A DNA stretch of 64,000 nt from the IMG/VR virus record IMGVR_UViG_3300042326_002445, positions 159,647 through 223,646 of that record. One strand, written 5' to 3'. Made by a program: the position numbers and the translations under genes. Of the stretch, positions 5,796-63,445 are shown in pieces (the first letter of the stretch is position 1; the number at the start of each line of letters is the position of its first letter). Under the pieces are notes generated by a model. The model did not search any database. It saw only the letters and a program-made list of their open reading frames with translations, and was not told the DNA's origin.

Positions 5796-5823
5796 TTGAC
5801 ACTCCTATCGTACACGCTATGAT
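5796..5823 (+). promoter_or_regulatory. sigma70-like promoter, predicted leaderless transcript
   Basis: TTGACA 5796-5801, 16-nt spacer, TATGAT 5818-5823; ATG at 5830 is 7 nt after the -10. Confidence 0.75.
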
Positions 5824-5829
5824 ACTGGC

Positions 5830-6063
5830 ATGAATCAGCTAGAGTCAATGCGTAAGATGTTATCGACAAAGTCTCAGGTCTGGGTGCGCTACAATCCAAA
5901 AGGAAGGGCTCCCCATCAGTCTAGGGCTAGGCTGCTTGAGCTACATGATTCTTATGCTTTGGTAAAACCAATCAAGCACGGAGGTCGTGTAGAAAAAGTG
6001 CCACTAAATACGATAAAGCTATGGCATAGTATGAATAATAAAATGAACAGTTTAAATGCGTAG
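5830..6063 (+). CDS. hypothetical protein
   Basis: 77 aa ORF directly behind the promoter. Confidence 0.7.
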   Translation: MNQLESMRKMLSTKSQVWVRYNPKGRAPHQSRARLLELHDSYALVKPIKHGGRVEKVPLNTIKLWHSMNNKMNSLNA

Positions 6064-6925
6064 AAACAAGCCTTGGATATTTTTAAACAAATCAGCTAAG
6101 TTATCTAACTCAAATTTTGAGTTAGGTTTTTGGCAAACTAATTTCATACAATTTACCCATATCTGTTTAGTTGATGAATCAACAGATAGCTTTAGCGAAA
6201 ATAACATTCATACAAGCATAGCAAGATTAGTTAATTCTAAAGATGCGAGTATGTTTAATTTTTTATGCTCCTTTCATTTTGGTGAATCTAAATTTCCACA
6301 AAATTCTTTTGAATTTTTTAAAATTAAAGATATTAAAAGAATTTGCGTTATAGTGAGTGACAAAATAAATGAAAGTCTTTACAGAGAAATATTGCTTGGG
6401 TTTTTTGACTTTATATTAGTTGATGAAGTAAGTGATCATTTTGGCGTAACTAATGTTATAAGAAACATTAATCCATTCGTAAAAATTTTTGTGTATAAGA
6501 ATTCAAGTTTAGATTTATTAGATCCAGTAAATAATAATTATAATATTATTGTGAATAGTTCATCAAAAAATGATGTAGTTTTAAAGAATCAAATTAAACA
6601 ACTTAATCTGAATGGGATTGAATGCGGTATAGAATGTTTAGAAAACTATCCAGTACACAAATCTTCAAATGGATGGATAGTCCTCCCGCAAATGAGAGAC
6701 AATAATGAGATTATAAGAAAATCAATTATTTTATATTCAAGTGGAGAAAAAGTGTTCGTTCCACAAGAAATATTTGATAATTTTCACTACGGGATACCTT
6801 ATAAATCTTTTAGAGAGATAAATGATTTGTCGATATATAATAAGTCAGATGACAAATGTGTTTTTGAATGTATTGCGCCATCAGATTTTGTAATAAAAAT
6901 ACTTTCTATTATTCATGGGAGTTAG
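6056..6925 (+). CDS. hypothetical protein, possibly a degenerate GT-B glycosyltransferase
   Basis: 289 aa; occupies the same position relative to 6915..7808 as the GT4 gene does relative to 42419..43231; no clear catalytic motifs. Confidence 0.4.
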   Translation: MRRNKPWIFLNKSAKLSNSNFELGFWQTNFIQFTHICLVDESTDSFSENNIHTSIARLVNSKDASMFNFLCSFHFGESKFPQNSFEFFKIKDIKRICVIVSDKINESLYREILLGFFDFILVDEVSDHFGVTNVIRNINPFVKIFVYKNSSLDLLDPVNNNYNIIVNSSSKNDVVLKNQIKQLNLNGIECGIECLENYPVHKSSNGWIVLPQMRDNNEIIRKSIILYSSGEKVFVPQEIFDNFHYGIPYKSFREINDLSIYNKSDDKCVFECIAPSDFVIKILSIIHGS

Positions 6926-7808
6926 TATGAGAGAGATAATTTGGTCAGTTTGTAGTGGAGACTCATGTTTGGCATTGCAGGGCTTTGTGCGTTCTTTAAG
7001 AGCTGCTGGTAATCAAAATGAATTTGTAGTATGGTCAGATTTTGAAATTGCAGGAGCTACAAGCATTCCAATCGATCAATCAATCAAGCTTGACTTTTTT
7101 GGAATGTGGAAGTTTGAATACCTTTCAAAACTTCACTCAATGCATCCAGATGCTCTTTTAGCATATTTTGGTCCTAATCATTATATGGTTTACAATTTTA
7201 CTAACTCTTTGAGTGAGTTGATGGGCGATGAACATTGTTTATCATTCTTAGAATCTAATTTGATGGGCGACAACTTGCAAAGACAAGAGTGGAATGAAAT
7301 AAATGTTCTTCAATTTTCTGACGCTGTAAGAAGCTTTGGCAATCTTTCTAATGATTGTTACAATCTAAACGCAAACCATTTTATGGTTCGTCCAAATTTT
7401 GTAAATGACTTTTACTCTATGACTAAGCTTGCTTCTGATCACTTAAGAAAAAGAAATATGAAAGTAAATGATGAACTTGTTCTTTCTGTCATAATGAATA
7501 CAAATATGCAAGATAAAAATAAGTATTTAATTTCAAATAATTCAGATACATACGGGATAGATGTGACTGGAGTGTTTACAGATAAACTTCCAGACGGCAC
7601 AGCATGGACATCGGAAGACTATTTTACTGGAGTAAAGTCTCAGGTCAATCCTAAACTTATATTCTGCCCTTTTAATAAGCACAATATAAAAAATATAGGT
7701 AGACAGCATCTTGGCAAGAGAATATCTAATATTGCTACTGGTCAGCCCGTAAATAAGGGCTGCGGAGCATGTCAGCGCTCAAAGCCTCCAGTCAAAGAGG
7801 TGCAGTGA
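6915..7808 (+). CDS. GT-A-like protein, paralog of 42419..43231, DxD absent, C-terminal GCGAC
   Basis: IIWSV...WKFEYL shared with the 42419 ORF; FGPNHY aligns with IDSDHY. Confidence 0.65.
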   Translation: MGVSMREIIWSVCSGDSCLALQGFVRSLRAAGNQNEFVVWSDFEIAGATSIPIDQSIKLDFFGMWKFEYLSKLHSMHPDALLAYFGPNHYMVYNFTNSLSELMGDEHCLSFLESNLMGDNLQRQEWNEINVLQFSDAVRSFGNLSNDCYNLNANHFMVRPNFVNDFYSMTKLASDHLRKRNMKVNDELVLSVIMNTNMQDKNKYLISNNSDTYGIDVTGVFTDKLPDGTAWTSEDYFTGVKSQVNPKLIFCPFNKHNIKNIGRQHLGKRISNIATGQPVNKGCGACQRSKPPVKEVQ

Positions 7809-7848
7809 TAAGAAAATTGGTATTATCTTGTAATAGGAGAATGACTAT

Positions 7849-8208
7849 ATGCTTATTAAAAGTTTTCTTACAATACAAAACCAATTAAGAATTTTACACT
7901 GGCAAACAACTTCATATGCCCAGCACAAGGCCCTTGGGTCTGCTTACGAAGACCTAGATGAACTTGTAGACGACTTTATTGAGATATTTGCTGGTGGCGA
8001 TAGGTCTATCTTGGAGGTAGGATCTTTTGAGTGTAAGTGTCACTCAATTGATTCCATATCTCCCTTAGACTTTATGAGTAGTGTAGAGAAGTTTGTTTCT
8101 GAAAGTCTTTCTGACGCTATCCCAGAGCATCGTTCCGATCTTCACAACATTAAAGATGAGATGCTGGCTGTGGTTAACAAAACTAAGTATTTGCTCAATT
8201 TAAAATAA
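7849..8208 (+). CDS. ferritin/Dps-like four-helix protein
   Basis: QLRILHWQTTSYAQHKALG..YE.L..LVD.FIE pattern of the phage Dps-like family. Confidence 0.7.
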   Translation: MLIKSFLTIQNQLRILHWQTTSYAQHKALGSAYEDLDELVDDFIEIFAGGDRSILEVGSFECKCHSIDSISPLDFMSSVEKFVSESLSDAIPEHRSDLHNIKDEMLAVVNKTKYLLNLK

Positions 8209-8306
8209 TTTATGTGCATAGAACGAGAAAACAACGAAAATTTACCAAGAGATTTTGCTATTCCGGTCATTGACAGCCACTCTTCGGATATAGATATAGA
8301 AGACTA

Positions 8307-8393
8307 GGACAGATGTCCGAGTGGTTGAAGGAGCAGCATTGGAAATGCTGTTTACGGGAAACCGTAACGTGGGTTCGAATCCCACTCTGTCCG
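8307..8393 (+). tRNA. tRNA-Ser (anticodon GGA)
   Basis: Acceptor GGACAGA/TCTGTCC, anticodon arm CAGCA-TTGGAAA-TGCTG, long variable arm, GTTCGAAT T-loop, G73; no encoded CCA. Confidence 0.95.
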
Positions 8394-8406
8394 CTATGGA
8401 GTTTCT

Positions 8407-8610
8407 ATGACCAGGAAAAGTACGATTTCTGCTTTATCAAAACTGGAAGTTCATTTGGTTGATAAAAGTGACTATCAAATTAATTCCGATGAACTTTATT
8501 TTTTGCCCATTCCAGATGAAATTATTAATAATTTAAAATGGAATGATGGAGATGAATTGAAAATGTCTATCAAAGATGGTAAAATTATATTAGTTAAAAA
8601 TAAGGTATAA
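8407..8610 (+). CDS. AbrB/MazE/SpoVT-family DNA-binding protein
   Basis: LPIPDEIINNLKWNDGDELKMSIKDGKIILVK. Confidence 0.75.
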   Translation: MTRKSTISALSKLEVHLVDKSDYQINSDELYFLPIPDEIINNLKWNDGDELKMSIKDGKIILVKNKV

Positions 8611-8634
8611 GTCTGCTGCTATAGAATTAATAGT

Positions 8635-8961
8635 ATGCGCAGGATTTTTAGTTTAATAAAAGATTTTGTAAAAACAGCATCAACGTCTCATTCTGTTTCT
8701 AGATTCCAATCAGCAGTTTTAAAATCTGGCAAATCTAGTTCCTCAAGAAAAAGCTTAGAGGTTAAGCTGCACTACAAGCGCTCATCTGAATTAGTGTCAG
8801 TAGACGTTGACGAATATACGAAGTCTGGGCATAAACATCGCAAGTATGAACTAGAAAACATATCGCCAAGCAATTTTTCTAGATTAGAAAAAATGATATC
8901 AAAAGGCCAATGGGGAATGTTTTTTGCGGTAGTTAACAAACACAGGGTTAAAGAAGACTAA
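8635..8961 (+). CDS. hypothetical protein
   Basis: 108 aa ORF; N-terminal FVKTAS. Confidence 0.7.
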   Translation: MRRIFSLIKDFVKTASTSHSVSRFQSAVLKSGKSSSSRKSLEVKLHYKRSSELVSVDVDEYTKSGHKHRKYELENISPSNFSRLEKMISKGQWGMFFAVVNKHRVKED

Positions 8962-11468: not shown

Positions 11469-11497
11469 TATTTATATTTTTCGAGGACTTTTGGTCC

Positions 11498-16916: not shown

Positions 16917-16987
16917 TGCCCCGTGATGTAACGGTAGCATCGGAGCCTTTGAAGCTTTTTGTCTTGGTTCGAATCCAAGCGGGGCAG
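16917..16987 (+). tRNA. tRNA-Gln (anticodon TTG)
   Basis: Acceptor TGCCCCG/CGGGGCA, anticodon loop CTTTGAA, GTTCGAAT T-loop, U1-A72 and G73; no encoded CCA. Confidence 0.93.
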
Positions 16988-46003: not shown

Positions 46004-46144
46004 CTGATACCTTTCTTAAAAAGTTTATAAATAAATTTAAAAGACATGTGTCCAATTGCGAAAGCAACCGCAAGAACTGTTAGCATTGTCCAAGTATTTT
46101 CACTCATATATTTTCTACTTTTACTTTCTTTATTATCGACTTAA

Positions 46145-46227
46145 TGCGAGCGGAGGGATTCGAACCTTCGTAGACAAATGTCAGCAGATTTACAGTCTGC
46201 CCTCGTTGACCGCTTGAGTACACTCGC
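46145..46227 (-). tRNA. tRNA-Tyr (anticodon GTA)
   Basis: GCGAGTG/CGCTCGC acceptor, GCAGA-CTGTAAA-TCTGC, long variable arm, G1-C72 and A73 (bacterial type). Confidence 0.95.
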
Positions 46228-46230
46228 AAA

Positions 46231-46302
46231 AGCCACCTGTGGGATTTGAACCCACAACCTCTGCTTTACAAAAGCAAGGCTCTACCGTTGAGCTAAAGTG
46301 GC
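46231..46302 (-). tRNA. tRNA-Thr (anticodon TGT)
   Basis: GCCACTT/AGGTGGC acceptor, TTGCT-TTTGTAA-AGCAG, TTCAAAT T-loop. Confidence 0.92.
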
Positions 46303-46309
46303 ATTCAAA

Positions 46310-46382
46310 CTCCTCCGACTGGACTCGAACCAGTGACCCGGGAGTTAACAGCTCCCTGCTCTACCAACTGAGCTACAGAGGA
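46310..46382 (-). tRNA. tRNA-Asn (anticodon GTT)
   Basis: TCCTCTG/CGGAGGA acceptor, GGGAG-CTGTTAA-CTCCC, G73. Confidence 0.95.
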
Positions 46383-46386
46383 ATAA

Positions 46387-46476
46387 CGGATAGAGAGGGA
46401 TTCGAACCCCCGGATGACTTCTTGAGCCATCGGCGGTTTAGTAAACCGCAGCCTTAAACCACTCGGCCATCTATCC
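46387..46476 (-). tRNA. tRNA-Ser body with anticodon ACT (A34)
   Basis: GGATAGA/TCTATCC acceptor, GCGGT-TTACTAA-ACCGC anticodon arm, long variable arm, G73. Confidence 0.88.
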
Positions 46477-46502
46477 ATGAATTTTATATCGGCACTGGAT
46501 CT

Positions 46503-49022: not shown

Positions 49023-49087
49023 CGAAGGCACTTGCAACTTAAAAGAAAAACTTAAATTTTTCTTTTGGTTTTGGACTGGCTGGATGC

Positions 49088-49115
49088 TTGCACTTATATC
49101 ATGCACTAGTATAAT
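49088..49115 (+). promoter_or_regulatory. sigma70-like promoter, predicted leaderless transcript
   Basis: TTGCAC 49088-49093, 16 nt, TATAAT 49110-49115; ATG 49122 at +7. Confidence 0.75.
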
Positions 49116-49121
49116 GCGTTA

Positions 49122-49352
49122 ATGTTCGCCATAAAAGTTGTCGGATATGACATTGACGGGGAGCCTCTTTTGCTTGCCGATGGCATTGGCGGTGAAGGGC
49201 GTAAAATTCTTGTTTTTTCATCTAAAGAATCTGCAGACAAAACATGCAAAGAGATGAATGTCATCAGTGGTCGCATGAAGACTACTGGTGGTTACGAAGT
49301 CATTAAGATTAAAAAAGAGTGGATTGAAGGCATGTCAGTCGAGCATCTGTAA
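49122..49352 (+). CDS. hypothetical protein
   Basis: 76 aa ORF; no RBS. Confidence 0.7.
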   Translation: MFAIKVVGYDIDGEPLLLADGIGGEGRKILVFSSKESADKTCKEMNVISGRMKTTGGYEVIKIKKEWIEGMSVEHL

Positions 49353-49388: not shown

Positions 49389-49416
49389 TTGACAAGGCTG
49401 TGCGCGCATGTATAGT
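49389..49416 (+). promoter_or_regulatory. sigma70-like promoter
   Basis: TTGACA 49389-49394, 16 nt, TG-TATAGT 49411-49416. Confidence 0.7.
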
Positions 49417-49553
49417 ACATGCACAAGGCGATTGCTTCCGTATACGCAAACGCTTTGTCTGCAGGCACTTACAAAAACTCTTTCATCAACTGAATCTGTT
49501 GTTTCAGTGATGCGAAGGAACAGTACTTGCTGAATTCTAGGAGAGTAAGCCAG

Positions 49554-50180
49554 ATGATCAACTTTATCGCCACTCAAGAGCACAAGACTACTACCGCAAG
49601 CAAGTCTATGACCCTCTACGAGATGTACGAGTACATCAGAGCGCACAGAGTAGAGCTTGCCTCAATGAAAAAGCAGGCCGCAAATACTCGAATTGAGCTT
49701 GAGCACATCGTTGCAGACATGACTTACAAGATTGCTTCTGTTGAAAGTGCTAAGAAGGCAAATAGACTGAGATCTGCTCTTGATGAGATGATCAAGAACA
49801 TTAGGGCAATTGAGGCATGCTCAAAAGAGATCGTAAGTCTTGAAGATCAGGCAAAATCTAAAAATTCTCAAAAGGACATCAGAAAGCCTTTCAGGGAATG
49901 TGTTGAGAACTTTGTTAAGCTTAAGGGTTCAGAGCCTTTTGAGCCCACCGAAGTAGCAAGGTTTGTTGCAGAGTCAAGAAATCAGCCTTTGACTAATTCT
50001 TTGCGAGTGTTTACTCACCGCATCATCAAAGACTTTGTGCTTGAAAAAAAGATCGTGCAGCTTGCTCATGGGCTTTATGAAAGCTCAAATGCTCCCACTC
50101 TCTTTTGTGAAGGATCTGTGATTATCGACAGTGCACAGATTACAGAGTCTTCTGTAGACCCAAAAGCAAATTGCGCATAA
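49554..50180 (+). CDS. coiled-coil protein with a possible C-terminal winged helix
   Basis: AGGAGA RBS; heptad-rich middle; KIVQLAHGLY wing-like end. Confidence 0.65.
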   Translation: MINFIATQEHKTTTASKSMTLYEMYEYIRAHRVELASMKKQAANTRIELEHIVADMTYKIASVESAKKANRLRSALDEMIKNIRAIEACSKEIVSLEDQAKSKNSQKDIRKPFRECVENFVKLKGSEPFEPTEVARFVAESRNQPLTNSLRVFTHRIIKDFVLEKKIVQLAHGLYESSNAPTLFCEGSVIIDSAQITESSVDPKANCA

Positions 50181-50898: not shown

Positions 50899-51894
50899 AT
50901 GCAAAAAACAGCGATTATCACAGGCGTCAATGGTCAGGATGGATCTTACCTTTCAGAGCTACTGCTATCGAAAGGTTACAGAGTAATAGGGCTGAAGAGA
51001 AGAACTTCAACTATTAATACATCTAGAGTAGATCATTTGATGTCTCACCCAGATTTTATATTGCGTTATTATGACTTGCAAGATGGACCATGCATAACTC
51101 ACCTTCTTGGCTCATGTCATGTTGATGAACTTTACAATCTGGCTGCACAGTCTCATGTGGGGGTGTCTTTTGAAATTCCAGAATACACATCATACGGGAT
51201 ATGCCAAGGAACCTTAAAGATACTTGAGGCAATACGCGCATCAAGTCCTCATACAAAGTTCTACCAAGCATCTTCTTCTGAAATGTTTGGAGACAGTACT
51301 GATTATGATGACAATCAGGCTTTTAATGAGAATAGTAAAATGTTACCTGTATCCCCATATGCATGCTCAAAGCTGCATGCGCATCACATGACTCGTGTTT
51401 ACAGAAATGCATACGGTATGCATGCGTCTTCCGGCATACTGTTTAATCATGAAAGCCCTCGTCGTGGTGAAACTTTTGTAACACGCAAAATCACAATTGC
51501 TGCTGCAAAGATTAAGCTTGGCATGCAAAGAAAGTTGAGTCTAGGCAATCTTGATGCTAAAAGAGATTGGGGTCATGCAGCAGATTATGTTGAAGCCATG
51601 TGGCTTATGCTTCAGCACGATTTTGGCGATGACTACGTGATCGCTACGAATGAAACTTACACTGTACGTGACTTCTTGAAGGTAGTTTTTGATCACGCTG
51701 GACTAGGAAGCTATGAGCAATATGTAGTAATAGACCAAAGACTTTTCCGTCCAAATGAAGTTCCTTTCTTAAAAGGAAATCCCGCAAAGGCAAAGTCAGT
51801 TTTGGGATGGAAGCCGAAGTACAACATGGAATCGCTAGCAATCAGCATGTTTGATGAAGACATGAAAAATTTAACAGAAAAGGTTTTAAGATGA
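50899..51894 (+). CDS. gmd: GDP-mannose 4,6-dehydratase
   Basis: ITGVNGQDGSYL, YNLAAQSHV, YQASSSEMFG, SPYACSK, NHESPRRGETFVTRKI, LGNLDAKRDWGHA. Confidence 0.95.
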   Translation: MQKTAIITGVNGQDGSYLSELLLSKGYRVIGLKRRTSTINTSRVDHLMSHPDFILRYYDLQDGPCITHLLGSCHVDELYNLAAQSHVGVSFEIPEYTSYGICQGTLKILEAIRASSPHTKFYQASSSEMFGDSTDYDDNQAFNENSKMLPVSPYACSKLHAHHMTRVYRNAYGMHASSGILFNHESPRRGETFVTRKITIAAAKIKLGMQRKLSLGNLDAKRDWGHAADYVEAMWLMLQHDFGDDYVIATNETYTVRDFLKVVFDHAGLGSYEQYVVIDQRLFRPNEVPFLKGNPAKAKSVLGWKPKYNMESLAISMFDEDMKNLTEKVLR

Positions 51895-52298
51895 GTAAGA
51901 AAAAAGATAATTCGAAAAAAGTTAATGGGAAGAAGCATGCAAAGAAAGAGGTTAAGAAGAAGGAAAAGAAGACTTCAAAGACAGCACAATCTAAGCCTAT
52001 GAAACCTCAGTTTGTATGGCCAAAAGAACATGAAGTAAAAGACAATAAGCCATGCAATGTCTCTGAGGAAAAGAAGGAAGAAACTTTGATGCCCGAAGAA
52101 GCTGGTTTTGCTTCATTTGAGGAACCCAAGCTGAATGGTGATGAAACTCCATTTATATTTACAAGTCACGTTTCGGTTGGAACATCTGCAAACTTTGATG
52201 AAATTAAAAGCAAGACATCTGAAATTGTTGAAAAAACAAAGAAAGACATCAAGGGCATGTGGAAAACTTTCATACGAAGGATGAAAGGGCTGGCTTGA
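51891..52298 (+). CDS. K/E-rich hypothetical protein
   Basis: 135 aa; ATGA overlap with gmd. Confidence 0.7.
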   Translation: MSKKKDNSKKVNGKKHAKKEVKKKEKKTSKTAQSKPMKPQFVWPKEHEVKDNKPCNVSEEKKEETLMPEEAGFASFEEPKLNGDETPFIFTSHVSVGTSANFDEIKSKTSEIVEKTKKDIKGMWKTFIRRMKGLA

Positions 52299-52322
52299 TT
52301 AAAGTTTTTGCAGGTGTATAAT
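52295..52322 (+). promoter_or_regulatory. sigma70-like promoter with extended -10, near-leaderless
   Basis: TTGATT 52295-52300, 16 nt, TG-TATAAT 52317-52322; ATG at 52331. Confidence 0.6.
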
Positions 52323-52330
52323 AGCCTGTT

Positions 52331-52525
52331 ATGATTCTTAAAGCATACTTTCTTCCAGTTGCAGCAGCTTTCTGCGTTTTTGCAGTAACTGCTGCAATTT
52401 TTATTCACAGCAAATTAAAAAATAAAAAAGTAACTAGAAAAAGTTATTCTGGAAATTCTTTGTCTTCTCAAATGCTTGACGACATTAAAAAAATAGAGAA
52501 GATTCTCTATGATAGTCAGGGATGA
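52331..52525 (+). CDS. small membrane-anchored protein
   Basis: N-terminal hydrophobic helix followed by basic residues. Confidence 0.65.
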   Translation: MILKAYFLPVAAAFCVFAVTAAIFIHSKLKNKKVTRKSYSGNSLSSQMLDDIKKIEKILYDSQG

Positions 52526-52549: not shown

Positions 52550-52578
52550 TTGACAAGTATAGACAACATCTCTATACT
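52550..52578 (+). promoter_or_regulatory. sigma70 promoter of csrA
   Basis: TTGACA 52550-52555, 17 nt, TATACT 52573-52578. Confidence 0.8.
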
Positions 52579-52621
52579 ACAAGAGAAGTCACGTGACTCA
52601 AACATCAAGCCAAGGAAGGTT

Positions 52622-52813
52622 ATGCAAAAAGAAAAAAACGAAAAGAAGGTTTTAGTTGTTTCTCGAAAAGTAGGAGAGATTGTGGTGATTGGCGACAGCG
52701 CCAGCCCTCTTGGAGAGATTGAAGTTGTTCGAATTGACGGGGGTAAGGTAAGAATTGCATTGAGGTTTCCTGAAGACATCAGGATCAACCGTAAAGAGAT
52801 TGCGTTAGCGTAA
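52622..52813 (+). CDS. csrA: carbon storage regulator CsrA/RsmA-family RNA-binding protein
   Basis: VLVVSRKVGEIVVIG...EVVRIDGGKVRIAL.FPEDIRINRKEI. Confidence 0.85.
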   Translation: MQKEKNEKKVLVVSRKVGEIVVIGDSASPLGEIEVVRIDGGKVRIALRFPEDIRINRKEIALA

Positions 52814-52837
52814 TAAGTTTTTTCATTTAGATTTTTG

Positions 52838-52868
52838 AAGGCTGCACATGAATATGTGCGGCCTTTTT
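52838..52868 (+). terminator. intrinsic terminator after csrA
   Basis: AAGGCTGCACAT-GAAT-ATGTGCGGCCTT plus T tract. Confidence 0.8.
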
Positions 52869-55128: not shown

Positions 55129-55194
55129 TAACGTATTTTATGAAATGAAGATTGCATTGATCACGAATGTATTGTTTAATAACTGGTCAAAAAC

Positions 55195-55758: not shown

Positions 55759-55782
55759 TCTACAAAAAGTACAGTACGGGGC

Positions 55783-55811
55783 TTGACAAAGCCCGCCTCC
55801 TGCACTACCTT
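55783..55811 (+). promoter_or_regulatory. sigma70-like promoter, predicted leaderless; -35 embedded in an inverted repeat
   Basis: TTGACA 55783-55788, 17 nt, TACCTT 55806-55811; ATG 55818 at +7; GGGCTT-GAC-AAAGCCC. Confidence 0.75.
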
Positions 55812-55817
55812 GTAGTC

Positions 55818-56078
55818 ATGTCAATGGCACAAGTAATGGAGCGCATGTCCTCCAAAGGCTACAGGTTTGCGGTTGGGATGATGACGCCAACTGCTATTCA
55901 ATTACTTTTCCCTAATTTTAATCCTTGCACTGGGCCGACGATGGTTCCCATGTGGGTGCGAGAAGAAAAAGACGGGTATGTGTTCTGCGTGCTTGGCTCT
56001 GAGCCCACAGAGAATCATCCTGAAAAGAAATTGCCACGTAGTTACTTTCTTAATCTCAACATTTTGCCCAAGCAATGA
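55818..56078 (+). CDS. hypothetical protein
   Basis: 86 aa; no RBS. Confidence 0.7.
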   Translation: MSMAQVMERMSSKGYRFAVGMMTPTAIQLLFPNFNPCTGPTMVPMWVREEKDGYVFCVLGSEPTENHPEKKLPRSYFLNLNILPKQ

Positions 56079-56557
56079 GAAAACCATATACTGAGCAAGA
56101 ATGGATTGTAAGAGGCAGAGAGCTTCTTTCAAGCAAATCCATTCAAAGTGCTGACGGCTGTATCTTATGGAATGGCTATGTCCACAAGACTTGTGGATAT
56201 GGCGTTCAAAAATTCATGGGAATGCCACGAGATGTTCGTCGTGTTGCTCTTATCTGCGCTGGTATGCAGCACAAAAAAGGAGTAGTAATTCCGTCATGCG
56301 GCAATAGACTGTGCATTAATCCTGAACATTTGTCACTTGTGAATCGACAGGTGTGGCGCGAAAAAAGATTTCCAACTGTTTTCCCTATTGGGGCAGGAGA
56401 GAAAAATGGTCGTGCAAGGCTTAATGAAAGTCTTGTTCGCAAGATGAGAAAAGACCGTGATGTCGGCAAGAAAGTCTCTGAACTTTCTGAAGAGTACGGG
56501 GTTTCAGAAAGCACTGTGCGAGAAATCCTAAGTAAAAATCTTTGGAAGCATTGCTAG
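56075..56557 (+). CDS. His-Me finger (HNH-type) protein with a C-terminal HTH, likely catalytically degenerate
   Basis: CILWNG..GYG, CGNRLCINPEHL, GEKNGRARL...VS.STVR.I. Confidence 0.75.
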   Translation: MRKPYTEQEWIVRGRELLSSKSIQSADGCILWNGYVHKTCGYGVQKFMGMPRDVRRVALICAGMQHKKGVVIPSCGNRLCINPEHLSLVNRQVWREKRFPTVFPIGAGEKNGRARLNESLVRKMRKDRDVGKKVSELSEEYGVSESTVREILSKNLWKHC

Positions 56558-56569
56558 CAGGAGTAGATC

Positions 56570-57328: not shown

Positions 57329-57330
57329 AA

Positions 57331-58532: not shown

Positions 58533-58788
58533 TTCTTTGAGTCGTTTGGAAGAAGACATCATTTGTGCTATCTCTCAGACAAGTAAGATTGATTACGATA
58601 CGCTGCAGAGATGTTTAATGAAAAAGCACAAAAGTTTGCTCAAGAGAGAGTTTGAGTACTCTGTCAACAACCTTGTCAGAGAAAATTACGTTGAAAAAAC
58701 ATGTGTAAGAGATGCTCTGGGCAAGGTGTCATGCATTGATTTTTCTCTCACGCCTTTTTACGATCTGCTGAGAGCGGCAAAAAACTGA
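58525..58788 (+). CDS. winged-helix-like hypothetical protein
   Basis: VNNLVRENYVEK...FSLTPFYDLLRAAK. Confidence 0.55.
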   Translation: MGNSLSRLEEDIICAISQTSKIDYDTLQRCLMKKHKSLLKREFEYSVNNLVRENYVEKTCVRDALGKVSCIDFSLTPFYDLLRAAKN

Positions 58789-58975
58789 AGTTTGCGGTCA
58801 CTCTGCCACTGGTCGGGATACTGATAGATAAGTATGCACCACGACCTGTTCATTTGGTTTTTTGTTATCGGACTCCCATCTGCAATTGCATTCTTGGGAT
58901 ACGCATACGCCAATGAAGTCTGGCCGTTTGATCCCAAAGTTCACTACAGCAACGATTGCTTGAGAAAGAGCAGCA

Positions 58976-59125
58976 ATGTCTACTCCAAAAGAAAAATCTG
59001 AGTACATCACTCTGTCGATTCCAGTTTCTGCCATCAAGTGCATTGTTCTTGCTGGCTTCACGGCATGGGGAGTTTGGATTCTCTTCCAGATGGTGAAAAT
59101 CATCCCCACGATCCCTTCGAAATAA
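58976..59125 (+). CDS. small membrane protein (not in ORF track)
   Basis: 49 aa MSTPKEKSEY...IVLAGFTAWGVWILFQMV. Confidence 0.55.
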   Translation: MSTPKEKSEYITLSIPVSAIKCIVLAGFTAWGVWILFQMVKIIPTIPSK

Positions 59126-59138
59126 AGGGGATTTTTCC

Positions 59139-59438
59139 GTGAATAAATCCAGTCCTTCAAGACTAGAGATTCAGGAAATGGCGATTGTTTTTTTGCGCAA
59201 AGGCAAATTGACCCTTGGCGAGATGTACGGTCTTTTTGAGGCTTATTACCGCACAAGTCACACCTCAAGAAGCAGTGAGTATTTTGCGGGAAGAATTATC
59301 AATGGTCTTAGTGCACTAGAAAAAAAGGGTGTTATTTTAGAAAGTCGCGCAGACAACCCGCATAATCCAACCTATGTCATCAACCCGATGTGGGAGATTT
59401 TAGACAAGGCTCGCACCGAAGCAGGCATCAAATCATGA
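59139..59438 (+). CDS. winged-helix-like hypothetical protein
   Basis: GLSALEKKGVI...TYVINPMWEILDKAR. Confidence 0.55.
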   Translation: MNKSSPSRLEIQEMAIVFLRKGKLTLGEMYGLFEAYYRTSHTSRSSEYFAGRIINGLSALEKKGVILESRADNPHNPTYVINPMWEILDKARTEAGIKS

Positions 59439-59842
59439 ATAGTGCCTCTTATACAGTTTTAGATGAATTGTACAGAATTTCTAAACTGCTTGATACAGAT
59501 GCGGGGGCTGTGGAGTTTGCCGTCTTACGTGAAGGCATCTCCAATCAGATTGAAGACATTGAAAGCGATGTTCTTGACTTTAAGAGAAAAGTCTTGAGCG
59601 ACTGCGATGATGTCTACGGCATCGTTGCCGGAATAGAGAAGATCAGGATGTGCTCATCTGCTCGTGACAGCATTATGTCTGTTGTTGAAAAAGCGCAGAA
59701 AGACCTTTATTCATGCATCTCTATACTTGATGATGCTGTCAGGAGCATAAACCGAGCAAGAAGTGCTGACTCTGCAAAGAGAGCTTCTTCTTATCTCTAC
59801 GACGCACACCAGTGTCTTTCAGAGGCACTTAGGCTCCTTTAA
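59435..59842 (+). CDS. helical hypothetical protein
   Basis: ATGA overlap with the upstream gene. Confidence 0.7.
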   Translation: MNSASYTVLDELYRISKLLDTDAGAVEFAVLREGISNQIEDIESDVLDFKRKVLSDCDDVYGIVAGIEKIRMCSSARDSIMSVVEKAQKDLYSCISILDDAVRSINRARSADSAKRASSYLYDAHQCLSEALRLL

Positions 59843-59864
59843 TGAATGAGGCGGGAGTATAAAA

Positions 59865-60374
59865 ATGGATAGCGATTCACGATCAGAAAAAGAGCAAATT
59901 GATTCTTTGGTCAAAGCGCTTTCCGAAAATGGAAAAGACGGCAAATCTATTGATGATTGTTTGCAAGAAGAAAAAGAAAACTTCAAGCAGAGTGCGGAAG
60001 ACTTTTGGAACAGACTTTCTAACGATGATCGTTTAAGGGCGTTCTATGAAGTCTGCAAGAGAATCCATGAAGGAGACCTTGTGCACCGTGGCTCTTACAG
60101 ATACGTTCTGTATCAGATATTTGGATTTGGTCCAGATGCGTACTTTGCAGGATTAGAGTGTGGATACATCGACATCCACAACTCCATCATGCCACCTGAA
60201 GACATAAAAAAAACAGAGAGCATTATTTCTGCCATGATGGAGGCAAGAGATGAGGCAAGACGCGAAGTGTGTGAGTTGAAGTCTCACAACTTTGAGGGAA
60301 AGATCTCTCCTCAAAGTTATGCAGCAATGAGGAAGTGGGACTGCTTCCCTGACGAATCACAGGGCCAGAAATAG
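59865..60374 (+). CDS. hypothetical protein with an RDEARREV...WDCF module
   Basis: 169 aa. Confidence 0.75.
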   Translation: MDSDSRSEKEQIDSLVKALSENGKDGKSIDDCLQEEKENFKQSAEDFWNRLSNDDRLRAFYEVCKRIHEGDLVHRGSYRYVLYQIFGFGPDAYFAGLECGYIDIHNSIMPPEDIKKTESIISAMMEARDEARREVCELKSHNFEGKISPQSYAAMRKWDCFPDESQGQK

Positions 60375-60470
60375 CGTCCTGTAATCGGTTCAGTACTTTT
60401 TTGAAATCTTGCCGTTTTCTGTGCTCTGAATCTTCAGATGTTGGACCTGTATCTATACGAGGCCACAACC

Positions 60471-60683
60471 ATGAATACTTGCAAAGCAATCGAACAGTTC
60501 ATGAAAGAAAACGGCTTTTTCATTTCAAGAAAAGGCAAACACTTAGTTTGGAAGAATCGTGATGGAGCAACTGTGGTGACAAGCAAAACTCCATCAGACC
60601 ACAGAACATTGAAAAACATAGAGTCATTAGTCAGAAAAATTAGACGGACAAACAGTTTGGCTAGTTTAAAAAATGCGGCATAA
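60471..60683 (+). CDS. HicA-like (dsRBD-fold) protein
   Basis: FMKENGF...KGKHLVWK...VVTSKTPSD, the HicA G-x-H pattern. Confidence 0.6.
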   Translation: MNTCKAIEQFMKENGFFISRKGKHLVWKNRDGATVVTSKTPSDHRTLKNIESLVRKIRRTNSLASLKNAA

Positions 60684-60724
60684 ATTTTCATTTTAAAAAG
60701 TGTCGGAAAAGTAGCATACACCTC

Positions 60725-60752
60725 TTGACAGCCCCCAACGGTTGCGTAAACT
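60725..60752 (+). promoter_or_regulatory. sigma70-like promoter, predicted leaderless transcript
   Basis: TTGACA 60725-60730, 16 nt, TAAACT 60747-60752; ATG 60759 at +7. Confidence 0.75.
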
Positions 60753-60758
60753 ACCTCT

Positions 60759-61049
60759 ATGACACTTGCCACTTCTACGAAAAAGCCATCGAAGCACCAC
60801 TACTTCATCCATTACAAGAAGGGTGACTACATCTCCACCAGAGATCTGCTGGAGGAGCGTTACGAAAGCGCCGTGTACGGATCAGGCATGTTCATCCAGA
60901 CGGGAGCATTCGACATCCACCTGTACTGCACTTCACAGAAGTTCAGAAACATCAAGCGGCTTCTCCATCGGAATGTCGTGAACAAGCTTGGGTCGCCCAT
61001 TAGTTTCAACTACACCCGCCAGACTGCTGCCGAATACAACAAGAGATAA
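60759..61049 (+). CDS. hypothetical protein, paralog of 63465..63734
   Basis: KKP.K.HY...Y..GDY...GSG....FD.H.YCT shared. Confidence 0.75.
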   Translation: MTLATSTKKPSKHHYFIHYKKGDYISTRDLLEERYESAVYGSGMFIQTGAFDIHLYCTSQKFRNIKRLLHRNVVNKLGSPISFNYTRQTAAEYNKR

Positions 61050-61070
61050 TTCTGAAACAAGGAAACCACC

Positions 61071-61901
61071 ATGCCTGCCAAAAAGAAAAACAAGATCAAT
61101 CCCATTCTTGCAAAGTTCTTTAAAGATGCTGTTCACAGCGACAACTTCTTAAAATTGATAGCCAAAAATTTTGCAGAGATTGATTTCTCCTATTACTCCA
61201 ACAAGCTGGATGAGCCTTTTGTGTTTTGCCTTCTGGACCTTGTGAACTGCAAGGACAAGAAGATGAAGGAGATCGCATACAATGTTGCTCAGCAATCGCT
61301 GTCGAAGCGGTGCATCGACAAGGCTCTTGCGTCCAAAGATTGCCGTCTCATGTGTATGGCTATCGAAAATGCTCGTCTGACAAAGGAGCAGGAACTCATT
61401 TGCATGACCTGCGAGTATGAGGATGTGCGGGGAACTGCTGCAGACAGTTGTCACGCGAGCAAGACGGTTTTGGGGCTTGCGCTTCAGGACGCTTCCCGGA
61501 GGGTCCGCATGGAGGCAGTAAGTAACTCCGAGATGCTCAATTACAGTGATTTGGCTGTTCAGGCTCTTAGCAGTCGTTCTCCAGATATTCGCACATCCAT
61601 CACAAAATACGCCTGTTGGAGCAAGACGGTGTGCGGTGCTGATGTTCACAAGGCTGCATTGGTCAGCAAATGGACCGATGTCCGCATTGAGATCGCTGAA
61701 AGTTCCGTGTACCTCACGGAGGGTCAGTGGCATACTCTTCTGGAAGACCCCAACAAAAATGTTCGCAAGGCAGCGCGTAAGCACCCGAACGCAAAGAAGT
61801 GGAAAGATCCTCTTCGCGCTCTTCTCCGCAAGGCTCGTGCTGCGCGCAAGGCGGGCAAAGTGGTCATCGAATCCCCCGCAGCAGAACCCATTGCCGACTG
61901 A
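61071..61901 (+). CDS. HEAT/LRV-like repeat protein
   Basis: Recurrent LxDxxxxVRxxA units (ALQDASRRVRMEA, LLEDPNKNVRKAA). Confidence 0.75.
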   Translation: MPAKKKNKINPILAKFFKDAVHSDNFLKLIAKNFAEIDFSYYSNKLDEPFVFCLLDLVNCKDKKMKEIAYNVAQQSLSKRCIDKALASKDCRLMCMAIENARLTKEQELICMTCEYEDVRGTAADSCHASKTVLGLALQDASRRVRMEAVSNSEMLNYSDLAVQALSSRSPDIRTSITKYACWSKTVCGADVHKAALVSKWTDVRIEIAESSVYLTEGQWHTLLEDPNKNVRKAARKHPNAKKWKDPLRALLRKARAARKAGKVVIESPAAEPIAD

Positions 61902-61909
61902 GGAGTCCC

Positions 61910-62131
61910 ATGGATTTCGACATGAACAGACCGACATCTTCCACCCGTGCAGATTTCATTCGTGATCTGCGAGAAATTGCTGCCGAAGCAAAAAATGGCG
62001 CAGATTTGGAAGACTGCCGTAAGCGAGCAGAAGAAGTTCTATGGAAATTGGCGAGGCTTGGCATCTACCCACATCCAACACACACCGAGTGGTTTCAGCC
62101 AATCTCCAAAGCATTGGGCTGGGATGATTAA
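61910..62131 (+). CDS. hypothetical protein
   Basis: GAGGAG RBS before ATG 61910. Confidence 0.7.
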   Translation: MDFDMNRPTSSTRADFIRDLREIAAEAKNGADLEDCRKRAEEVLWKLARLGIYPHPTHTEWFQPISKALGWDD

Positions 62132-62169
62132 ACATAAATATTCTTTTGAAGTGAAAGGAATCACGCAAG

Positions 62170-62547
62170 ATGGCACTTGAACCAAAGCCACAGGAAATAA
62201 GGCTGAGACACATCAACGAGTCACTTTCTGAGGCAATCAGATATTTTGATCCAGACAGATGGTATGAACATCGTCTTCTGATGCTTCAAATGAAGGACAT
62301 GATTGACGAACTCGTGTCTCAACGCGACGATGCGAGGGAGCAGGAAGAGCGCTTTTCCGATGATGCCCTGCGCCTGATGGAGGAGCGCAATCAGGCGCTG
62401 AAGGAGCGTGACGAGGCAAGACGAGAAGTTGCCCAGTCGCAAGCGCAGTACAACTCCCTCATGTTTGACAATTCTCGTTTACACGATCCTCATGCCATTG
62501 CTGAGTCAAGGGGCTGGGACTGCTTCAAGAAAGATGACGGTAAGTGA
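62170..62547 (+). CDS. coiled-coil protein with an RDEARREV...GWDCF module
   Basis: 125 aa; shares its module with 59865..60374. Confidence 0.75.
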   Translation: MALEPKPQEIRLRHINESLSEAIRYFDPDRWYEHRLLMLQMKDMIDELVSQRDDAREQEERFSDDALRLMEERNQALKERDEARREVAQSQAQYNSLMFDNSRLHDPHAIAESRGWDCFKKDDGK

Positions 62548-62687
62548 AGATAAGTCCCCAAACTCTTGATCTATTGGATTTGTTGTGGCTCAACTTCATG
62601 ATTCTGACCTTTATTGCTTTTCTGTGTGTCGGCATTGCCATCGGCATGACAGAGATTGAGATACACGAAATGAGGAATTTCAAGTGA
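62544..62687 (+). CDS. small membrane protein (not in ORF track)
   Basis: GTGA coupling at both ends; hydrophobic FMILTFIAFLCVGIAIG. Confidence 0.55.
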   Translation: MKISPQTLDLLDLLWLNFMILTFIAFLCVGIAIGMTEIEIHEMRNFK

Positions 62688-63058
62688 GCAAGAAGTATCG
62701 CAAGGCGACAAATGACATTGTGGAAGGCGCGTTTACTGCTTCTCACTCCCGTAGCGAACGAATGCTGTCAAAGTGCATGAGAGATCCGCATCCCTTGATC
62801 CGTTTTGCGGCGGCAGGAAATCCAAACGCCACGGCAAAAATACTCCGATTGGCAATGGCAGATCCGTGTCCAGAAGTTCGTGGAGCAGCCGCTTCCAATG
62901 GAAGGATCAGCCGTTCTCTGTGGAATGAAGCTGCCATTGACTCCAGCAAGCTTGTTCGCTCCGAAGCAGCAGCAAACGCCAAGGCAATCAGGAGTGGATG
63001 GAATGATCCACTTCACTCCTTGCTCTACAGTGCTAAAAAGAAAAAATTGAAGAAGTAA
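62684..63058 (+). CDS. LRV/HEAT repeat protein
   Basis: DPHPLIRFAAAGNPNAT, DPCPEVRGAAASN, DSSKLVRSEAAAN. Confidence 0.8.
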   Translation: MSKKYRKATNDIVEGAFTASHSRSERMLSKCMRDPHPLIRFAAAGNPNATAKILRLAMADPCPEVRGAAASNGRISRSLWNEAAIDSSKLVRSEAAANAKAIRSGWNDPLHSLLYSAKKKKLKK

Positions 63059-63101
63059 TCTTTATCTTTTATGTAATCTATGTCAAAGTAGCGTACTATA
63101 C

Positions 63102-63130
63102 TTGACGGCGCTAGCCTCTTGTGCTACCAT
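63102..63130 (+). promoter_or_regulatory. sigma70-like promoter, near-leaderless
   Basis: TTGACG 63102-63107, 17 nt, TACCAT 63125-63130; ATG at 63140. Confidence 0.7.
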
Positions 63131-63139
63131 ACGATGAGC

Positions 63140-63445
63140 ATGGCTAAGAACAGTACTCCTGAAGAACTCCTGAAAGACTTAGGCAGTAAGAATGGTTATG
63201 TCCGCTGTGCTGCTGCGGAGCATCCCAATGCTACTCCCGAAGTCCTGCTGAAGGCAATCGAAGACAGGTCTGTTCGTGTGCGCCGCCATGCTGCCCGGAA
63301 TCCCAATGCCACTCCCGAAGTACTCCTGAAGGCAATTGGAGACAAGGATTGGTCCGTTTGCAGCGCTGCTCAAGAGAGTTTACAAAACGATCCCCTTCTT
63401 CAACTCCAAGTCTCTGCTCTGAAGGCACAGAAAGCCGCCTCTTAA
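63140..63445 (+). CDS. 26-aa leucine-rich-variant (LRV) repeat protein
   Basis: PNATPEVLLKAI repeated at a 78-nt period. Confidence 0.85.
   Translation: MAKNSTPEELLKDLGSKNGYVRCAAAEHPNATPEVLLKAIEDRSVRVRRHAARNPNATPEVLLKAIGDKDWSVCSAAQESLQNDPLLQLQVSALKAQKAAS

What the first reader, a model, noticed from the sequence alone, without database searches (positions are those of the whole stretch)
5796..63140. Sigma70 promoters placed to give leaderless mRNAs
Seen: in four promoters the ATG lies exactly 7 nt after the -10 hexamer (ATG 5830, 49122, 55818, 60759). Two more have a leader of only about 2-3 nt (52331, 63140), and none of these genes has an SD. Known: transcription starts about 7 nt after the -10, and leaderless mRNAs are read by 70S ribosomes without SD pairing. 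Inference: the first genes of early operons are systematically leaderless, possibly to escape a translation shut-off aimed at leadered mRNA.
Basis: partly seen in the sequence, partly recalled or inferred. Interest (0 to 1): 0.72.

Follow-up and report, generated by a model that had tools for sequence, protein, structure and literature searches.

The report
Leaderless first genes behind phage promoters
In an uncultivated freshwater jumbo phage, four host-type promoters sit so close to their genes that the messenger RNA should begin exactly at the start codon; related phages keep this spacing, so it is probably real, but it is a known kind of arrangement.

Summary
At 5796, 49088, 55783 and 60725 a -35/-10 pair is followed by exactly 6 nt and then the ATG of a 76-96 aa ORF. 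At 52295 and 63102 the gap is 8 and 9 nt. None of the six has an SD.

It is more than chance under strict definitions. Among 400 first-ATG ORF starts, TTGACN-16/18-TANNNT-6 nt-ATG occurs 3 times, against 0.04 in dinucleotide shuffles. Loose mismatch-count promoter definitions show no enrichment.

The best evidence is comparative. All four exact sites have diverged relatives that keep the -35, the -10 and the ATG at the same 6-nt distance, while the spacer, the discriminator and the N-terminal codons change. Synonymous changes start at codon 2.

"Systematically leaderless" is too strong. Two equally conserved strong promoters in the same region (49389, 52550) have long leaders with canonical SDs. 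The -10 at 52295 is not conserved, and 63102 has no informative relative. No RNA data could be found, so start sites remain predicted.

The shut-off idea is untested. The phage does encode a CsrA homologue (52622-52813) and, outside the window, an IF3 homologue.

Verdict: a real, conserved, predicted leaderless design; a new member of a known kind.

The parts
5796..5829 (+). Promoter P1: -35 TTGACA 5796-5801, 16-nt spacer, -10 TATGAT 5818-5823, discriminator ACTGGC; predicted +1 is A5830
   Evidence: Relative L096 keeps TTGACA, TATGAT, ACTGGC and the ATG, with a 17-nt spacer of different sequence. The site abuts a divergent minus-strand ORF (5319-5795), so there is no room for a leader.
5830..6063 (+). 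Leaderless gene 1, 77 aa ORFan; overlaps the next gene (6056-6925) by 8 nt
   Evidence: Codons 2 and 6 differ synonymously in L096 (AAT/AAC, TCA/TCC). The ENA pipeline did not call this gene in L096. No Pfam or PHROG hit.
49088..49121 (+). Promoter P2: weak -35 TTGCAC, 16 nt, consensus -10 TATAAT 49110-49115, discriminator GCGTTA; predicted +1 is A49122
   Evidence: L097 (70% aa relative) keeps TTGCGC, a 16-nt spacer, TATAAT, GCGTTG and the ATG.
49122..49352 (+). Leaderless gene 2, 76 aa ORFan
   Evidence: No other ATG in the first 40 codons. The gene callers used the same ATG in P0006 and P0007.
55783..55817 (+). Promoter P3: -35 TTGACA, 17 nt, -10 TACCTT 55806-55811, discriminator GTAGTC; predicted +1 is A55818. 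An A-tract AAAAAGT lies 12 nt before the -35
   Evidence: Four lineages (window, L084, L036, L097) keep the -35, the block CTCCTG(C/A)AC+TACCTT and the ATG at d=6. Their discriminators are GTAGTC, GTAGTC, CCGTGC and CACGGC.
55818..56078 (+). Leaderless gene 3, 86 aa ORFan; its stop overlaps the start of the next gene (ATGA; 56075-56557, HNH-endonuclease-like)
   Evidence: Ser2 is coded TCA/TCG/AGC and Val6 GTA/GTG/GTC across lineages, so the frame is coding from the first ATG. PHROG HNH hits for the next gene.
60725..60758 (+). Promoter P4: -35 TTGACA, 16 nt, -10 TAAACT 60747-60752, discriminator ACCTCT; predicted +1 is A60759. AAAAGT lies 12 nt before the -35
   Evidence: L086 keeps AAAAGTAGCATACAC, TTGACT, a wholly different 16-nt spacer, TATACT, 6 nt and the ATG.
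60759..61049 (+). Leaderless gene 4, 96 aa ORFan
   Evidence: No ATG in the next 38 codons. L086 has a 5-codon in-frame deletion just after the start yet keeps d=6, and the JGI caller chose the same ATG.
52295..52525 (+). P5 (TTGATT-16-TATAAT, 8 nt) plus a 64-aa hydrophobic ORF starting at 52331; predicted leader 0-3 nt; doubtful promoter
   Evidence: The -10 is TATAAT here, TAGGCT in L036 and TTCTTT in L097. The -35 contains the stop codon of the upstream gene.
63102..63445 (+). P6 (TTGACG-17-TACCAT, 9 nt) plus a 101-aa HEAT/LRV-repeat ORF starting at 63140; predicted leader AGC (3 nt). AAAGT lies 12 nt before the -35
   Evidence: No orthologous relative was found; the homologues lie in other contexts.
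49389..50180 (+). Contrast: leadered promoter TTGACA-16-TATAGT (49389-49416), about 131-nt leader, SD GGAG 49541-49544, gene ATG 49554-50180
   Evidence: The promoter, the initial transcribed bases and the SD are conserved in L097.
52550..52866 (+). Contrast: leadered promoter TTGACA-17-TATACT (52550-52578), 43-nt leader, SD AAGGAAGG, CsrA-homologue gene 52622-52813, terminator-like hairpin 52837-52866
   Evidence: The SD block is invariant in three lineages. Pfam CsrA 40.6 bits (cut-off 27).

Best explanation
The window is the last 64 kb of a 224-kb record of an uncultivated lake-water jumbo phage. The record is about 55% complete by CheckV's estimate. Its small-gene regions (about 5.8 kb and 49-64 kb, + strand) are driven by one class of host sigma-70-type promoters: -35 TTGACA, a 16-17 nt spacer, -10 TAnnnT, and often an A-tract AAAAAGT 12 nt upstream of the -35.

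At four of these promoters the A of the initiator ATG occupies the 7th base after the -10, which is the canonical +1. In three of the four it is preceded by a pyrimidine. The transcript should therefore begin with pppAUG. Translation of the first cistron would then start by the leaderless route: 70S ribosome and fMet-tRNA binding a 5'-terminal AUG, with no SD pairing.

The following cistrons are reached in two ways. In two operons the stop and start overlap (6056/6063; ATGA at 56075). In the other two there are ordinary SDs (61071, and 49554, which also has its own promoter at 49389).

Shown here: the sequence anatomy, its enrichment over shuffles, the conservation of the spacing across diverged lineages, and coding from the first ATG.

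Inferred, not shown: the start site itself, recognition by the host holoenzyme, the early timing, and the translation mechanism.

The sites at 63102 (predicted 3-nt leader) and 52295 (0-3 nt, -10 not conserved) are weaker candidates of the same kind.
For: - Exact anatomy at the stated coordinates.
- Enrichment: 3 observed against 0.043 expected in shuffles. The strict pattern peaks at d=6 only.
- Conservation of the -10-to-ATG distance in every one of the four sites, despite changed spacer, discriminator and N-terminal codons and nearby indels.
- Synonymous substitutions from codon 2 onward.
- No SD, and at 49122 and 60759 no alternative ATG.
- P1 fills the whole 34-nt gap to a divergent gene.
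- Leadered promoters of the same class have a purine at the 7th base after the -10 and conserved SDs. This shows that the host uses SDs where a leader exists.
- Independent replication: in 46 non-redundant unrelated viral loci (787 kb), 6 of 45 TTGACN-16/18-TAnAAT promoters have an ORF-opening ATG at exactly d=6, and every other distance has at most 2 (P about 1e-6). These include a homologous pair at 32% identity that both keep d=6.
- Precedent: cluster O mycobacteriophages (PMC4351075), phiYS40 (PMC3594737), and leaders under 5 nt forming a distinct class in L. cremoris (PMC10986495).
Against: - No transcript data: no RNA run was listed for this DNA, so +1 is predicted from spacing only.
- The -10 boxes TACCTT and TAAACT are weak, and the -35 at 49088 matches only 3/6.
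- Loose promoter definitions give no genome-wide enrichment.
- Three of the sites (55783, 60725, 63102) follow a same-strand gene within 60-80 nt with no terminator-like hairpin. Read-through transcripts, on which these ATGs would be internal and without an SD, probably exist as well.
- The phage has its own sigma-like gene, so the holoenzyme that uses these promoters is not established.
- At least two of the d=6 hits in unrelated loci look spurious: L028 is probably an RNA gene and L043 lies inside an epimerase gene.
Confidence: 0.72

Rival explanations
1. The promoters are real, but translation starts at a downstream in-frame ATG, giving a short 18-27 nt leader. This is only possible for genes 1 and 3.
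For: In-frame ATGs exist at 5848, 5857 and 55845. ATG 55845 is conserved in all four lineages, and the Logan caller chose it in L097.
Against: No conserved SD precedes these ATGs. The codons between the first ATG and the internal ones show synonymous changes, including Ser TCA/AGC. The first ATG itself and its 6-nt distance are invariant while its neighbours vary. Genes 2 and 4 have no such alternative.
Confidence: 0.1
2. These genes are mainly expressed from read-through of upstream transcripts, and the ATGs are used by SD-independent internal initiation (coupling, 70S scanning, or S1 on an unstructured AU-rich region). On this view the -35/-10-like boxes contribute little.
For: No terminator-like hairpin lies upstream of 55783, 60725 or 63102. 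Many other genes in the region also lack a clear SD. The -10 at 52295 decays in relatives while the small ORF stays.
Against: The invariant -35 and -10 blocks and the fixed 6-nt distance across lineages are not explained by this model. P1 faces a divergent gene, so no same-strand upstream operon exists there. The pattern is enriched over shuffles.
Confidence: 0.12
3. Chance: promoter-like hexamers in an AT-rich genome happen to lie before ATGs.
For: The generic sigma-70 scan of 46-64 kb finds 39 sites against 34 expected. Loose definitions give no d=6 excess.
Against: The shuffle test gives 3 against 0.043. All four sites are conserved in relatives of about 43-93% protein identity. The pattern was replicated in unrelated loci.
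Confidence: 0.03
4. The design exists to escape, or to be timed by, phage-imposed control of translation. In one version the phage CsrA blocks GGA/SD-containing leaders and leaderless first cistrons escape. In another the phage IF3 later switches leaderless early messages off.
For: A CsrA homologue sits in the same region, on a leadered, GGA-rich, conserved SD message. An IF3 homologue lies at G000 92838-93332. CsrA blocks ribosome binding at GGA motifs near the RBS (PMC12038007). High IF3 inhibits leaderless translation (PMC9031893). phiYS40 couples leaderless messages to IF2/IF3 changes (PMC3594737).
Against: Nothing links these genes functionally to the leaderless messages. The downstream cistrons of the leaderless operons carry SDs with GGA (61071, 63465, 56570) and would not escape. 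The timing of IF3 and CsrA expression is unknown. Phage IF3 and CsrA genes are common in phages generally.
Confidence: 0.15

Closest known systems
Cluster O mycobacteriophage SigA-like promoters (PL1, PR2, PL2) predicted to give leaderless mRNAs (PMC4351075)
   Same: [quoted passage not shown] One case is a divergent intergenic region. The prediction rests on sequence and is conserved among related phages.
   Different: Those phages infect Actinobacteria, where leaderless genes are the norm. Here the host is unknown, the promoters have a strong TTGACA -35, and leadered genes carry canonical SDs. This phage is a roughly 400-kb-class freshwater jumbo phage.
Thermus phage phiYS40 (Sevostyanova et al. 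2007, as summarised in PMC3594737)
   Same: A large lytic phage in which a whole class of messages is leaderless, combined with a change in initiation factors.
   Different: In phiYS40 the middle and late messages are leaderless, and the host IF2/IF3 levels change. Here the candidates are presumed early first cistrons, only some promoters are leaderless, and the phage carries its own IF3 homologue. Nothing here has been measured.
Lambda cI mRNA from PRM (my own knowledge; cited as a model leaderless mRNA in PMC9031893)
   Same: A sigma-70 promoter with +1 at the A of the AUG, translated without an SD by 70S ribosomes.
   Different: Lambda has a single regulatory gene of a temperate phage arranged this way. 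Here there are four to six operon-first ORFans.
'-10 region adjacent to ORF' expression pattern in Deinococcus-Thermus (PMC12340547) and leaderless classes in gene finders (GeneMarkS-2; my own knowledge, seen here only as a title in reference lists)
   Same: A -10 box at a fixed short distance upstream of the start codon is used as the signature of leaderless transcription.
   Different: Those are genome-wide host features. Here the pattern is a minority feature confined to one promoter class of a phage.
Jumbo phages phiKZ and AR9 (PMC8244752, PMC5312081)
   Same: Jumbo phages whose early transcription has been mapped.
   Different: phiKZ has no leaderless transcript and AR9 has 26-491 nt leaders. 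Both use their own RNA polymerases and promoters. The present phage uses host-type promoters.

Membership tests
Bacterial leaderless mRNA | The transcription start coincides with the start codon, or lies fewer than about 5 nt before it | not testable with these tools
   No RNA run was listed. The start is predicted from the 6-nt distance between the -10 and the ATG.
Bacterial leaderless mRNA | A 5'-terminal AUG, not GUG or UUG, as start codon | tested here: met
   All six sites and all relatives have ATG.
Bacterial leaderless mRNA | No Shine-Dalgarno sequence or other leader signal | tested here: met
   No SD core of 4 or more letters lies 3-12 nt upstream. That space is taken by the promoter.
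Bacterial leaderless mRNA | The ORF is translated from that AUG | tested here: inconclusive
   Indirect support only: synonymous changes from codon 2, conserved full-length orthologues, and no alternative ATG in genes 2 and 4. There are no proteomic or ribosome data.
Sigma-70 (housekeeping) promoter | -35 TTGACA-like, 16-18 nt spacer, -10 with T1, A2 and T6 | tested here: met
   The -35 is 5-6/6 at five sites and 3/6 at 49088. The -10 is 3-6/6 with T, A and T kept.
Sigma-70 (housekeeping) promoter | Used by the host holoenzyme | not testable with these tools
   The host is unknown. The phage has a sigma-like ORF of its own.
phiYS40-type leaderless programme | A whole temporal class of phage messages is leaderless | tested here: not met
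   Two conserved promoters of the same class and region are leadered with SDs. No d=6 promoters were found elsewhere in the 224 kb.
CsrA/RsmA family (gene 52622-52813) | Match to the Pfam CsrA model above the curated cut-off | tested here: met
   PF02599, 40.6 bits against a cut-off of 27, residues 11-61.
Translation initiation factor IF3 (G000 92838-93332, outside the window) | IF3 N-terminal and C-terminal domains | tested here: inconclusive
   IF3_N scores 85.7 bits, over its cut-off. IF3_C is a partial match at 24.9 bits, below the cut-off of 34.8. phmmer against solved IF-3 gives E 1e-16 over residues 8-144.

The most novel reading that the evidence does not exclude
The leaderless first cistrons are one arm of a phage-run programme acting at translation initiation. 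Immediately after injection, host RNA polymerase makes pppAUG messages that idle 70S ribosomes can read without SD pairing. The phage's own CsrA homologue (on a GGA-rich leadered message) and its IF3 homologue then re-weight initiation between leaderless and SD-led messages, giving an early-to-late switch at the level of the ribosome. A wider corollary is that exact d=6 leaderless promoters are common in aquatic phage contigs and are under-called by gene finders.
Probability: 0.15. Interest if true: 0.75.

Novelty: new member of a known kind. Interest (0 to 1): 0.45.

Why it matters
If start-site mapping confirms the prediction, this is a clean case in a jumbo phage where host-type promoters and leaderless initiation sit side by side with SD-led messages of the same promoter class. 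The same genome also encodes an IF3 and a CsrA homologue. That combination makes the old question of why phages use leaderless messages testable with simple reporters.

There is also a practical point for annotation. Gene callers missed one of these conserved genes in a relative (L096) and picked a downstream start in another (L097). The same d=6 signature recurs in unrelated viral contigs. Short first genes of phage operons are therefore probably under-annotated in viromes.

Tried and rejected
- **RNA evidence.** Two searches for public runs found no RNA run, only lake-water DNA assemblies. Read laying was therefore not used, because DNA contigs cannot show start sites.
- **Phage collection.** The window has no nucleotide match. 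The SNF2 helicase gives only matches below 25% identity to assorted phages.
- **Host inference.** The IMPDH/GMP-reductase-like gene found only a 36% match in bacterial genomes. The host stays unknown, so the rival that the host is simply a leaderless-rich taxon could not be tested.
- **Loose promoter scoring.** Mismatch counts, with all ATGs or with a greedy gene set, give weak or no enrichment.
- **Relatives of the 63102 promoter.** Homologues of the HEAT/LRV protein in four other viral contigs are paralogues in other contexts, some with an SD.
- **Relatives by neighbouring genes.** Searches in the viral collection for 5796 and 49088 gave only identical copies. Diverged relatives came from the protein database instead.
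- **Ribosomal proteins.** No S21 or S1 was found in the 224 kb held.
- **Motif search.** The strict upstream motif GTAnnnTAC-N4-6-TTGAC is found only at three of the sites (plus one reverse-strand hit overlapping the 63088 site), so it is not a genome-wide signal.
- **Contig beyond the window end (L002).** It shows no further d=5-9 promoters.
- **Unrelated loci.** Two of the d=6 hits (L028, L043) look spurious on inspection.
- **Papers.** The phiYS40 primary paper is not held, so a review was cited instead.

Full report
**What the window is.** The window is the last 64 kb of a 223,646-base IMG/VR virus record that CheckV rates about 55% complete. The DNA occurs in many lake-water metagenomes. 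It has no close match among deposited phages.

The record carries giant ORFs, six tRNA genes and a large glycosyltransferase block. It also has a sigma-like ORF just upstream of the window, and bacterial-type promoters and SDs. It is therefore a jumbo phage of an unknown freshwater host. GC rises from about 33% to 47% towards the end of the window. The finding concerns two stretches of small + strand genes, near 5.8 kb and from 49 to 64 kb.

**The observation.** All six sites are as described.
- Four have exactly six bases between the -10 hexamer and the ATG, at 5830, 49122, 55818 and 60759.
- Three of these have a perfect TTGACA -35 at a 16-17 nt spacing. The fourth (49088) has only TTG in the -35, but a perfect TATAAT.
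- The base before the ATG is a pyrimidine in three of the four, and in all their relatives but one (L097 at 49088). This fits the usual pyrimidine(-1)/purine(+1) start preference (my own knowledge).
- At 52331 the gap is 8 nt and at 63140 it is 9 nt.
- None of the six has an SD.

**Is it more than chance?** The answer depends on how a promoter is defined.
- A generic sigma-70 scan of 46-64 kb finds no more sites than shuffles do.
- Loose mismatch-count definitions show no excess at the 6-nt distance.
- The specific pattern TTGACN-16/17-TANNNT has only 35 hits in the whole record. Three of them have an ORF-opening ATG at d=6, and no other distance exceeds two.
- I held the 400 first-ATG ORF starts fixed and shuffled their upstream 60 nt. 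This gives 0.043 expected against 3 observed (none of 300 shuffles reached 3). With TTGNNN as the -35 it gives 0.72 against 5.

**Comparative evidence.** This is the strongest part. The viral and metagenome collections and the protein database hold diverged relatives for all four exact sites.
- **P1 (5796).** L096, whose neighbouring protein is 43% identical, keeps TTGACA, TATGAT, ACTGGC and the ATG. Its spacer is 17 instead of 16 nt and of different sequence.
- **P2 (49088).** L097 (70% protein identity) keeps TTGCGC-16-TATAAT-GCGTTG-ATG.
- **P3 (55783).** Four lineages keep the -35, a 15-nt block ending in TACCTT, and the ATG. The six bases in between read GTAGTC, GTAGTC, CCGTGC or CACGGC.
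- **P4 (60725).** L086 has an unrelated 16-nt spacer, TATACT instead of TAAACT, a 1-nt insertion upstream and a 15-nt deletion just inside the ORF. The ATG is still six bases from the -10.
- **Coding from codon 2.** Ser2 of gene 3 is TCA, TCG or AGC, and Val6 is GTA, GTG or GTC. Codons 2 and 6 of gene 1 differ synonymously.
- **No alternative start.** Genes 2 and 4 have no other ATG for about 40 codons.
- **No room for a leader at P1.** It fills the entire 34-nt gap to a divergently oriented ORF.

**The same promoter class also makes leadered messages.**
- Promoter 49389 (TTGACA-16-TATAGT) is conserved in L097. It has a leader of about 131 nt and a GGAG 9 nt before ATG 49554.
- Promoter 52550 (TTGACA-17-TATACT) is conserved in L036 and L097. 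It has a 43-nt leader ending in an invariant AAGGAAGG block.
- Promoters 49389, 55783, 60725 and 63102 share an A-tract ending in AAAGT exactly 12 nt before the -35. I read this as an UP-like element.
- In both leadered promoters the 7th base after the -10 is a purine.

So one promoter class yields both message types. The host clearly uses SDs where a leader exists. "Systematically leaderless" is therefore too strong: four of at least six conserved promoters are leaderless.

**The two short-leader sites are weaker.**
- The -10 at 52295 is TATAAT here, TAGGCT in L036 and absent in L097. Its -35 overlaps the upstream stop codon.
- For 63102 I found only paralogues in other contexts.
- A 3-nt leader would still fall in the class usually counted as leaderless. 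Leaders under 5 nt formed a separate mode in L. cremoris, and none of 4-14 nt was seen there (PMC10986495).

**Mechanism.** The best reading has these steps.
- Host-type RNA polymerase starts at the A of the ATG.
- The pppAUG message is bound directly by 70S ribosomes with initiator tRNA.
- Downstream cistrons follow by overlap coupling (6056/6063; ATGA at 56075) or by their own SDs (61071, and 49554, which also has its own promoter at 49389).
- The first 40 nt of the six messages are no more structured than shuffles.

Only the anatomy, the statistics and the conservation are shown here. The start site, the polymerase, the timing and the initiation route are inferred. No RNA run could be found to test them.

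**The shut-off idea.** Two finds bear on it.
- Gene 52622-52813, on the leadered 52550 message, is a CsrA homologue. CsrA proteins block ribosome binding at GGA motifs near the RBS, and phage copies are known (PMC12038007, PMC11879866).
- Outside the window, G000 92838-93332 encodes an IF3 homologue. Huge phages are known to carry IF1 and IF3 (PMC7162821), and viral IF3 clusters exist.
- In E. coli, excess IF3 inhibits leaderless translation (PMC9031893). In phiYS40, leaderless messages go with lower IF3 and higher IF2 (PMC3594737).

These facts make control at the level of initiation plausible. They do not show it, and the direction is unclear. The SD-bearing downstream cistrons of the leaderless operons would not escape a block on SD-led initiation.

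**Comparison with known systems.**
- Leaderless phage messages are established for lambda cI.
- They are predicted in just this way for cluster O mycobacteriophages (PMC4351075).
- They were measured in phiYS40.
- One jumbo-phage paper even calls phage transcripts "often leaderless" (PMC5312081). The jumbo phages mapped so far, phiKZ and AR9, have none.

The present case is therefore a new member of a known kind. It is notable for the exact, conserved spacing in a host-promoter-using jumbo phage, next to leadered siblings and phage IF3 and CsrA genes.

**A wider signal.** In 46 non-redundant, unrelated viral loci fetched through a shared GDP-mannose dehydratase gene, 6 of 45 near-consensus promoters have an ORF-opening ATG at exactly d=6. 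No other distance exceeds two.
- Two of these hits look spurious.
- Others look real. A homologous pair at 32% identity both keep d=6. One locus has two divergent consensus promoters that both keep d=6.
- Gene callers failed on such genes in relatives: one gene was missed in L096, and a downstream start was chosen in L097.

Noticed in passing
window 52622-52813 (+), with promoter 52550-52578 and hairpin 52837-52866: A phage CsrA homologue (Pfam 40.6 bits). It sits on its own leadered message whose GGA-rich SD block is invariant in three lineages, and it is followed by a terminator-like hairpin. The GGA-rich SD could allow autoregulation.
   Followed up: partly
outside the window: G000:C1:92838-93332 (+) = L107:1258-1752: A 164-aa IF3 homologue. 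The N-domain match is strong, the C-domain is divergent, and the match to solved IF-3 has E 1e-16. Its start overlaps the stop of the preceding ORF.
   Followed up: partly
window 55769-55777, 60711-60719, 63088-63096: A partly palindromic GTA-N3-TAC, preceded by an A-tract, lies 5 nt upstream of the -35. It is conserved in L036, L084, L086 and L097. It could be an UP-like element or an operator for a dimeric regulator.
   Followed up: partly
window 49044-49065: An all-A/T palindrome (AGAAAAACTTAA.TTTTTCT) between the upstream gene and promoter 49088. It is conserved, and perfectly symmetric, in L097. It could be an operator or a weak hairpin.
   Followed up: no
window 56075-56557 (+): The second gene of the 55783 operon is HNH-endonuclease-like (PHROG hits) with a weak HTH/sigma region-4 match. 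It is 78% conserved in the other lineages and its start overlaps the stop of the leaderless gene (ATGA).
   Followed up: partly
window 12217-46003: A block of about 34 kb, mostly ORFs of 200-350 aa at about 33% GC. The one ORF tested in it is a fused family-2/family-1 glycosyltransferase with a methyltransferase region. GDP-mannose 4,6-dehydratase lies at 50899-51894. This would be an unusually large glycan-synthesis set for a phage.
   Followed up: no
window 46144-46477 (-), 8307-8394 (+), 16917-16987 (+): Six tRNA genes. Four are in a tight minus-strand cluster, one of them read as tRNA-Ser with anticodon ACT.
   Followed up: no
window 59865-63734: Repeated modules of HEAT/LRV-repeat proteins (61071, 63140; possibly 59865, whose relative in L086 resembles the 63140 protein), each with a small partner ORF. 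The 63465 protein resembles the leaderless 60759 protein at about 33% (through its L086 orthologue). GC here is 47%, against 33% in most of the record.
   Followed up: partly
L034:3484-3709 (an unrelated viral contig): A 225-bp intergenic region with two divergent consensus promoters, each with its ATG exactly 6 nt after the -10. It looks like a leaderless genetic switch.
   Followed up: no
L021:5712-5749 and L024:10431-10467 (unrelated viral contigs): Homologous proteins of about 370 aa (32% identity), each behind a consensus promoter with the ATG at d=6. The leaderless design is kept across deep divergence in another phage group.
   Followed up: partly
L096:606-866 and L097:8807-9067: Public gene calls mishandle these leaderless genes. 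The orthologue of gene 1 is not called at all in L096. The orthologue of gene 3 is called from codon 10 in L097.
   Followed up: yes
outside the window: G000:C1 about 157.4-158.3 kb (+) and about 120.1 kb (+): A sigma-70 region-2 match over the Pfam cut-off in a roughly 300-aa ORF, and a weaker second one. These are probably the phage's own sigma factors for later genes.
   Followed up: no
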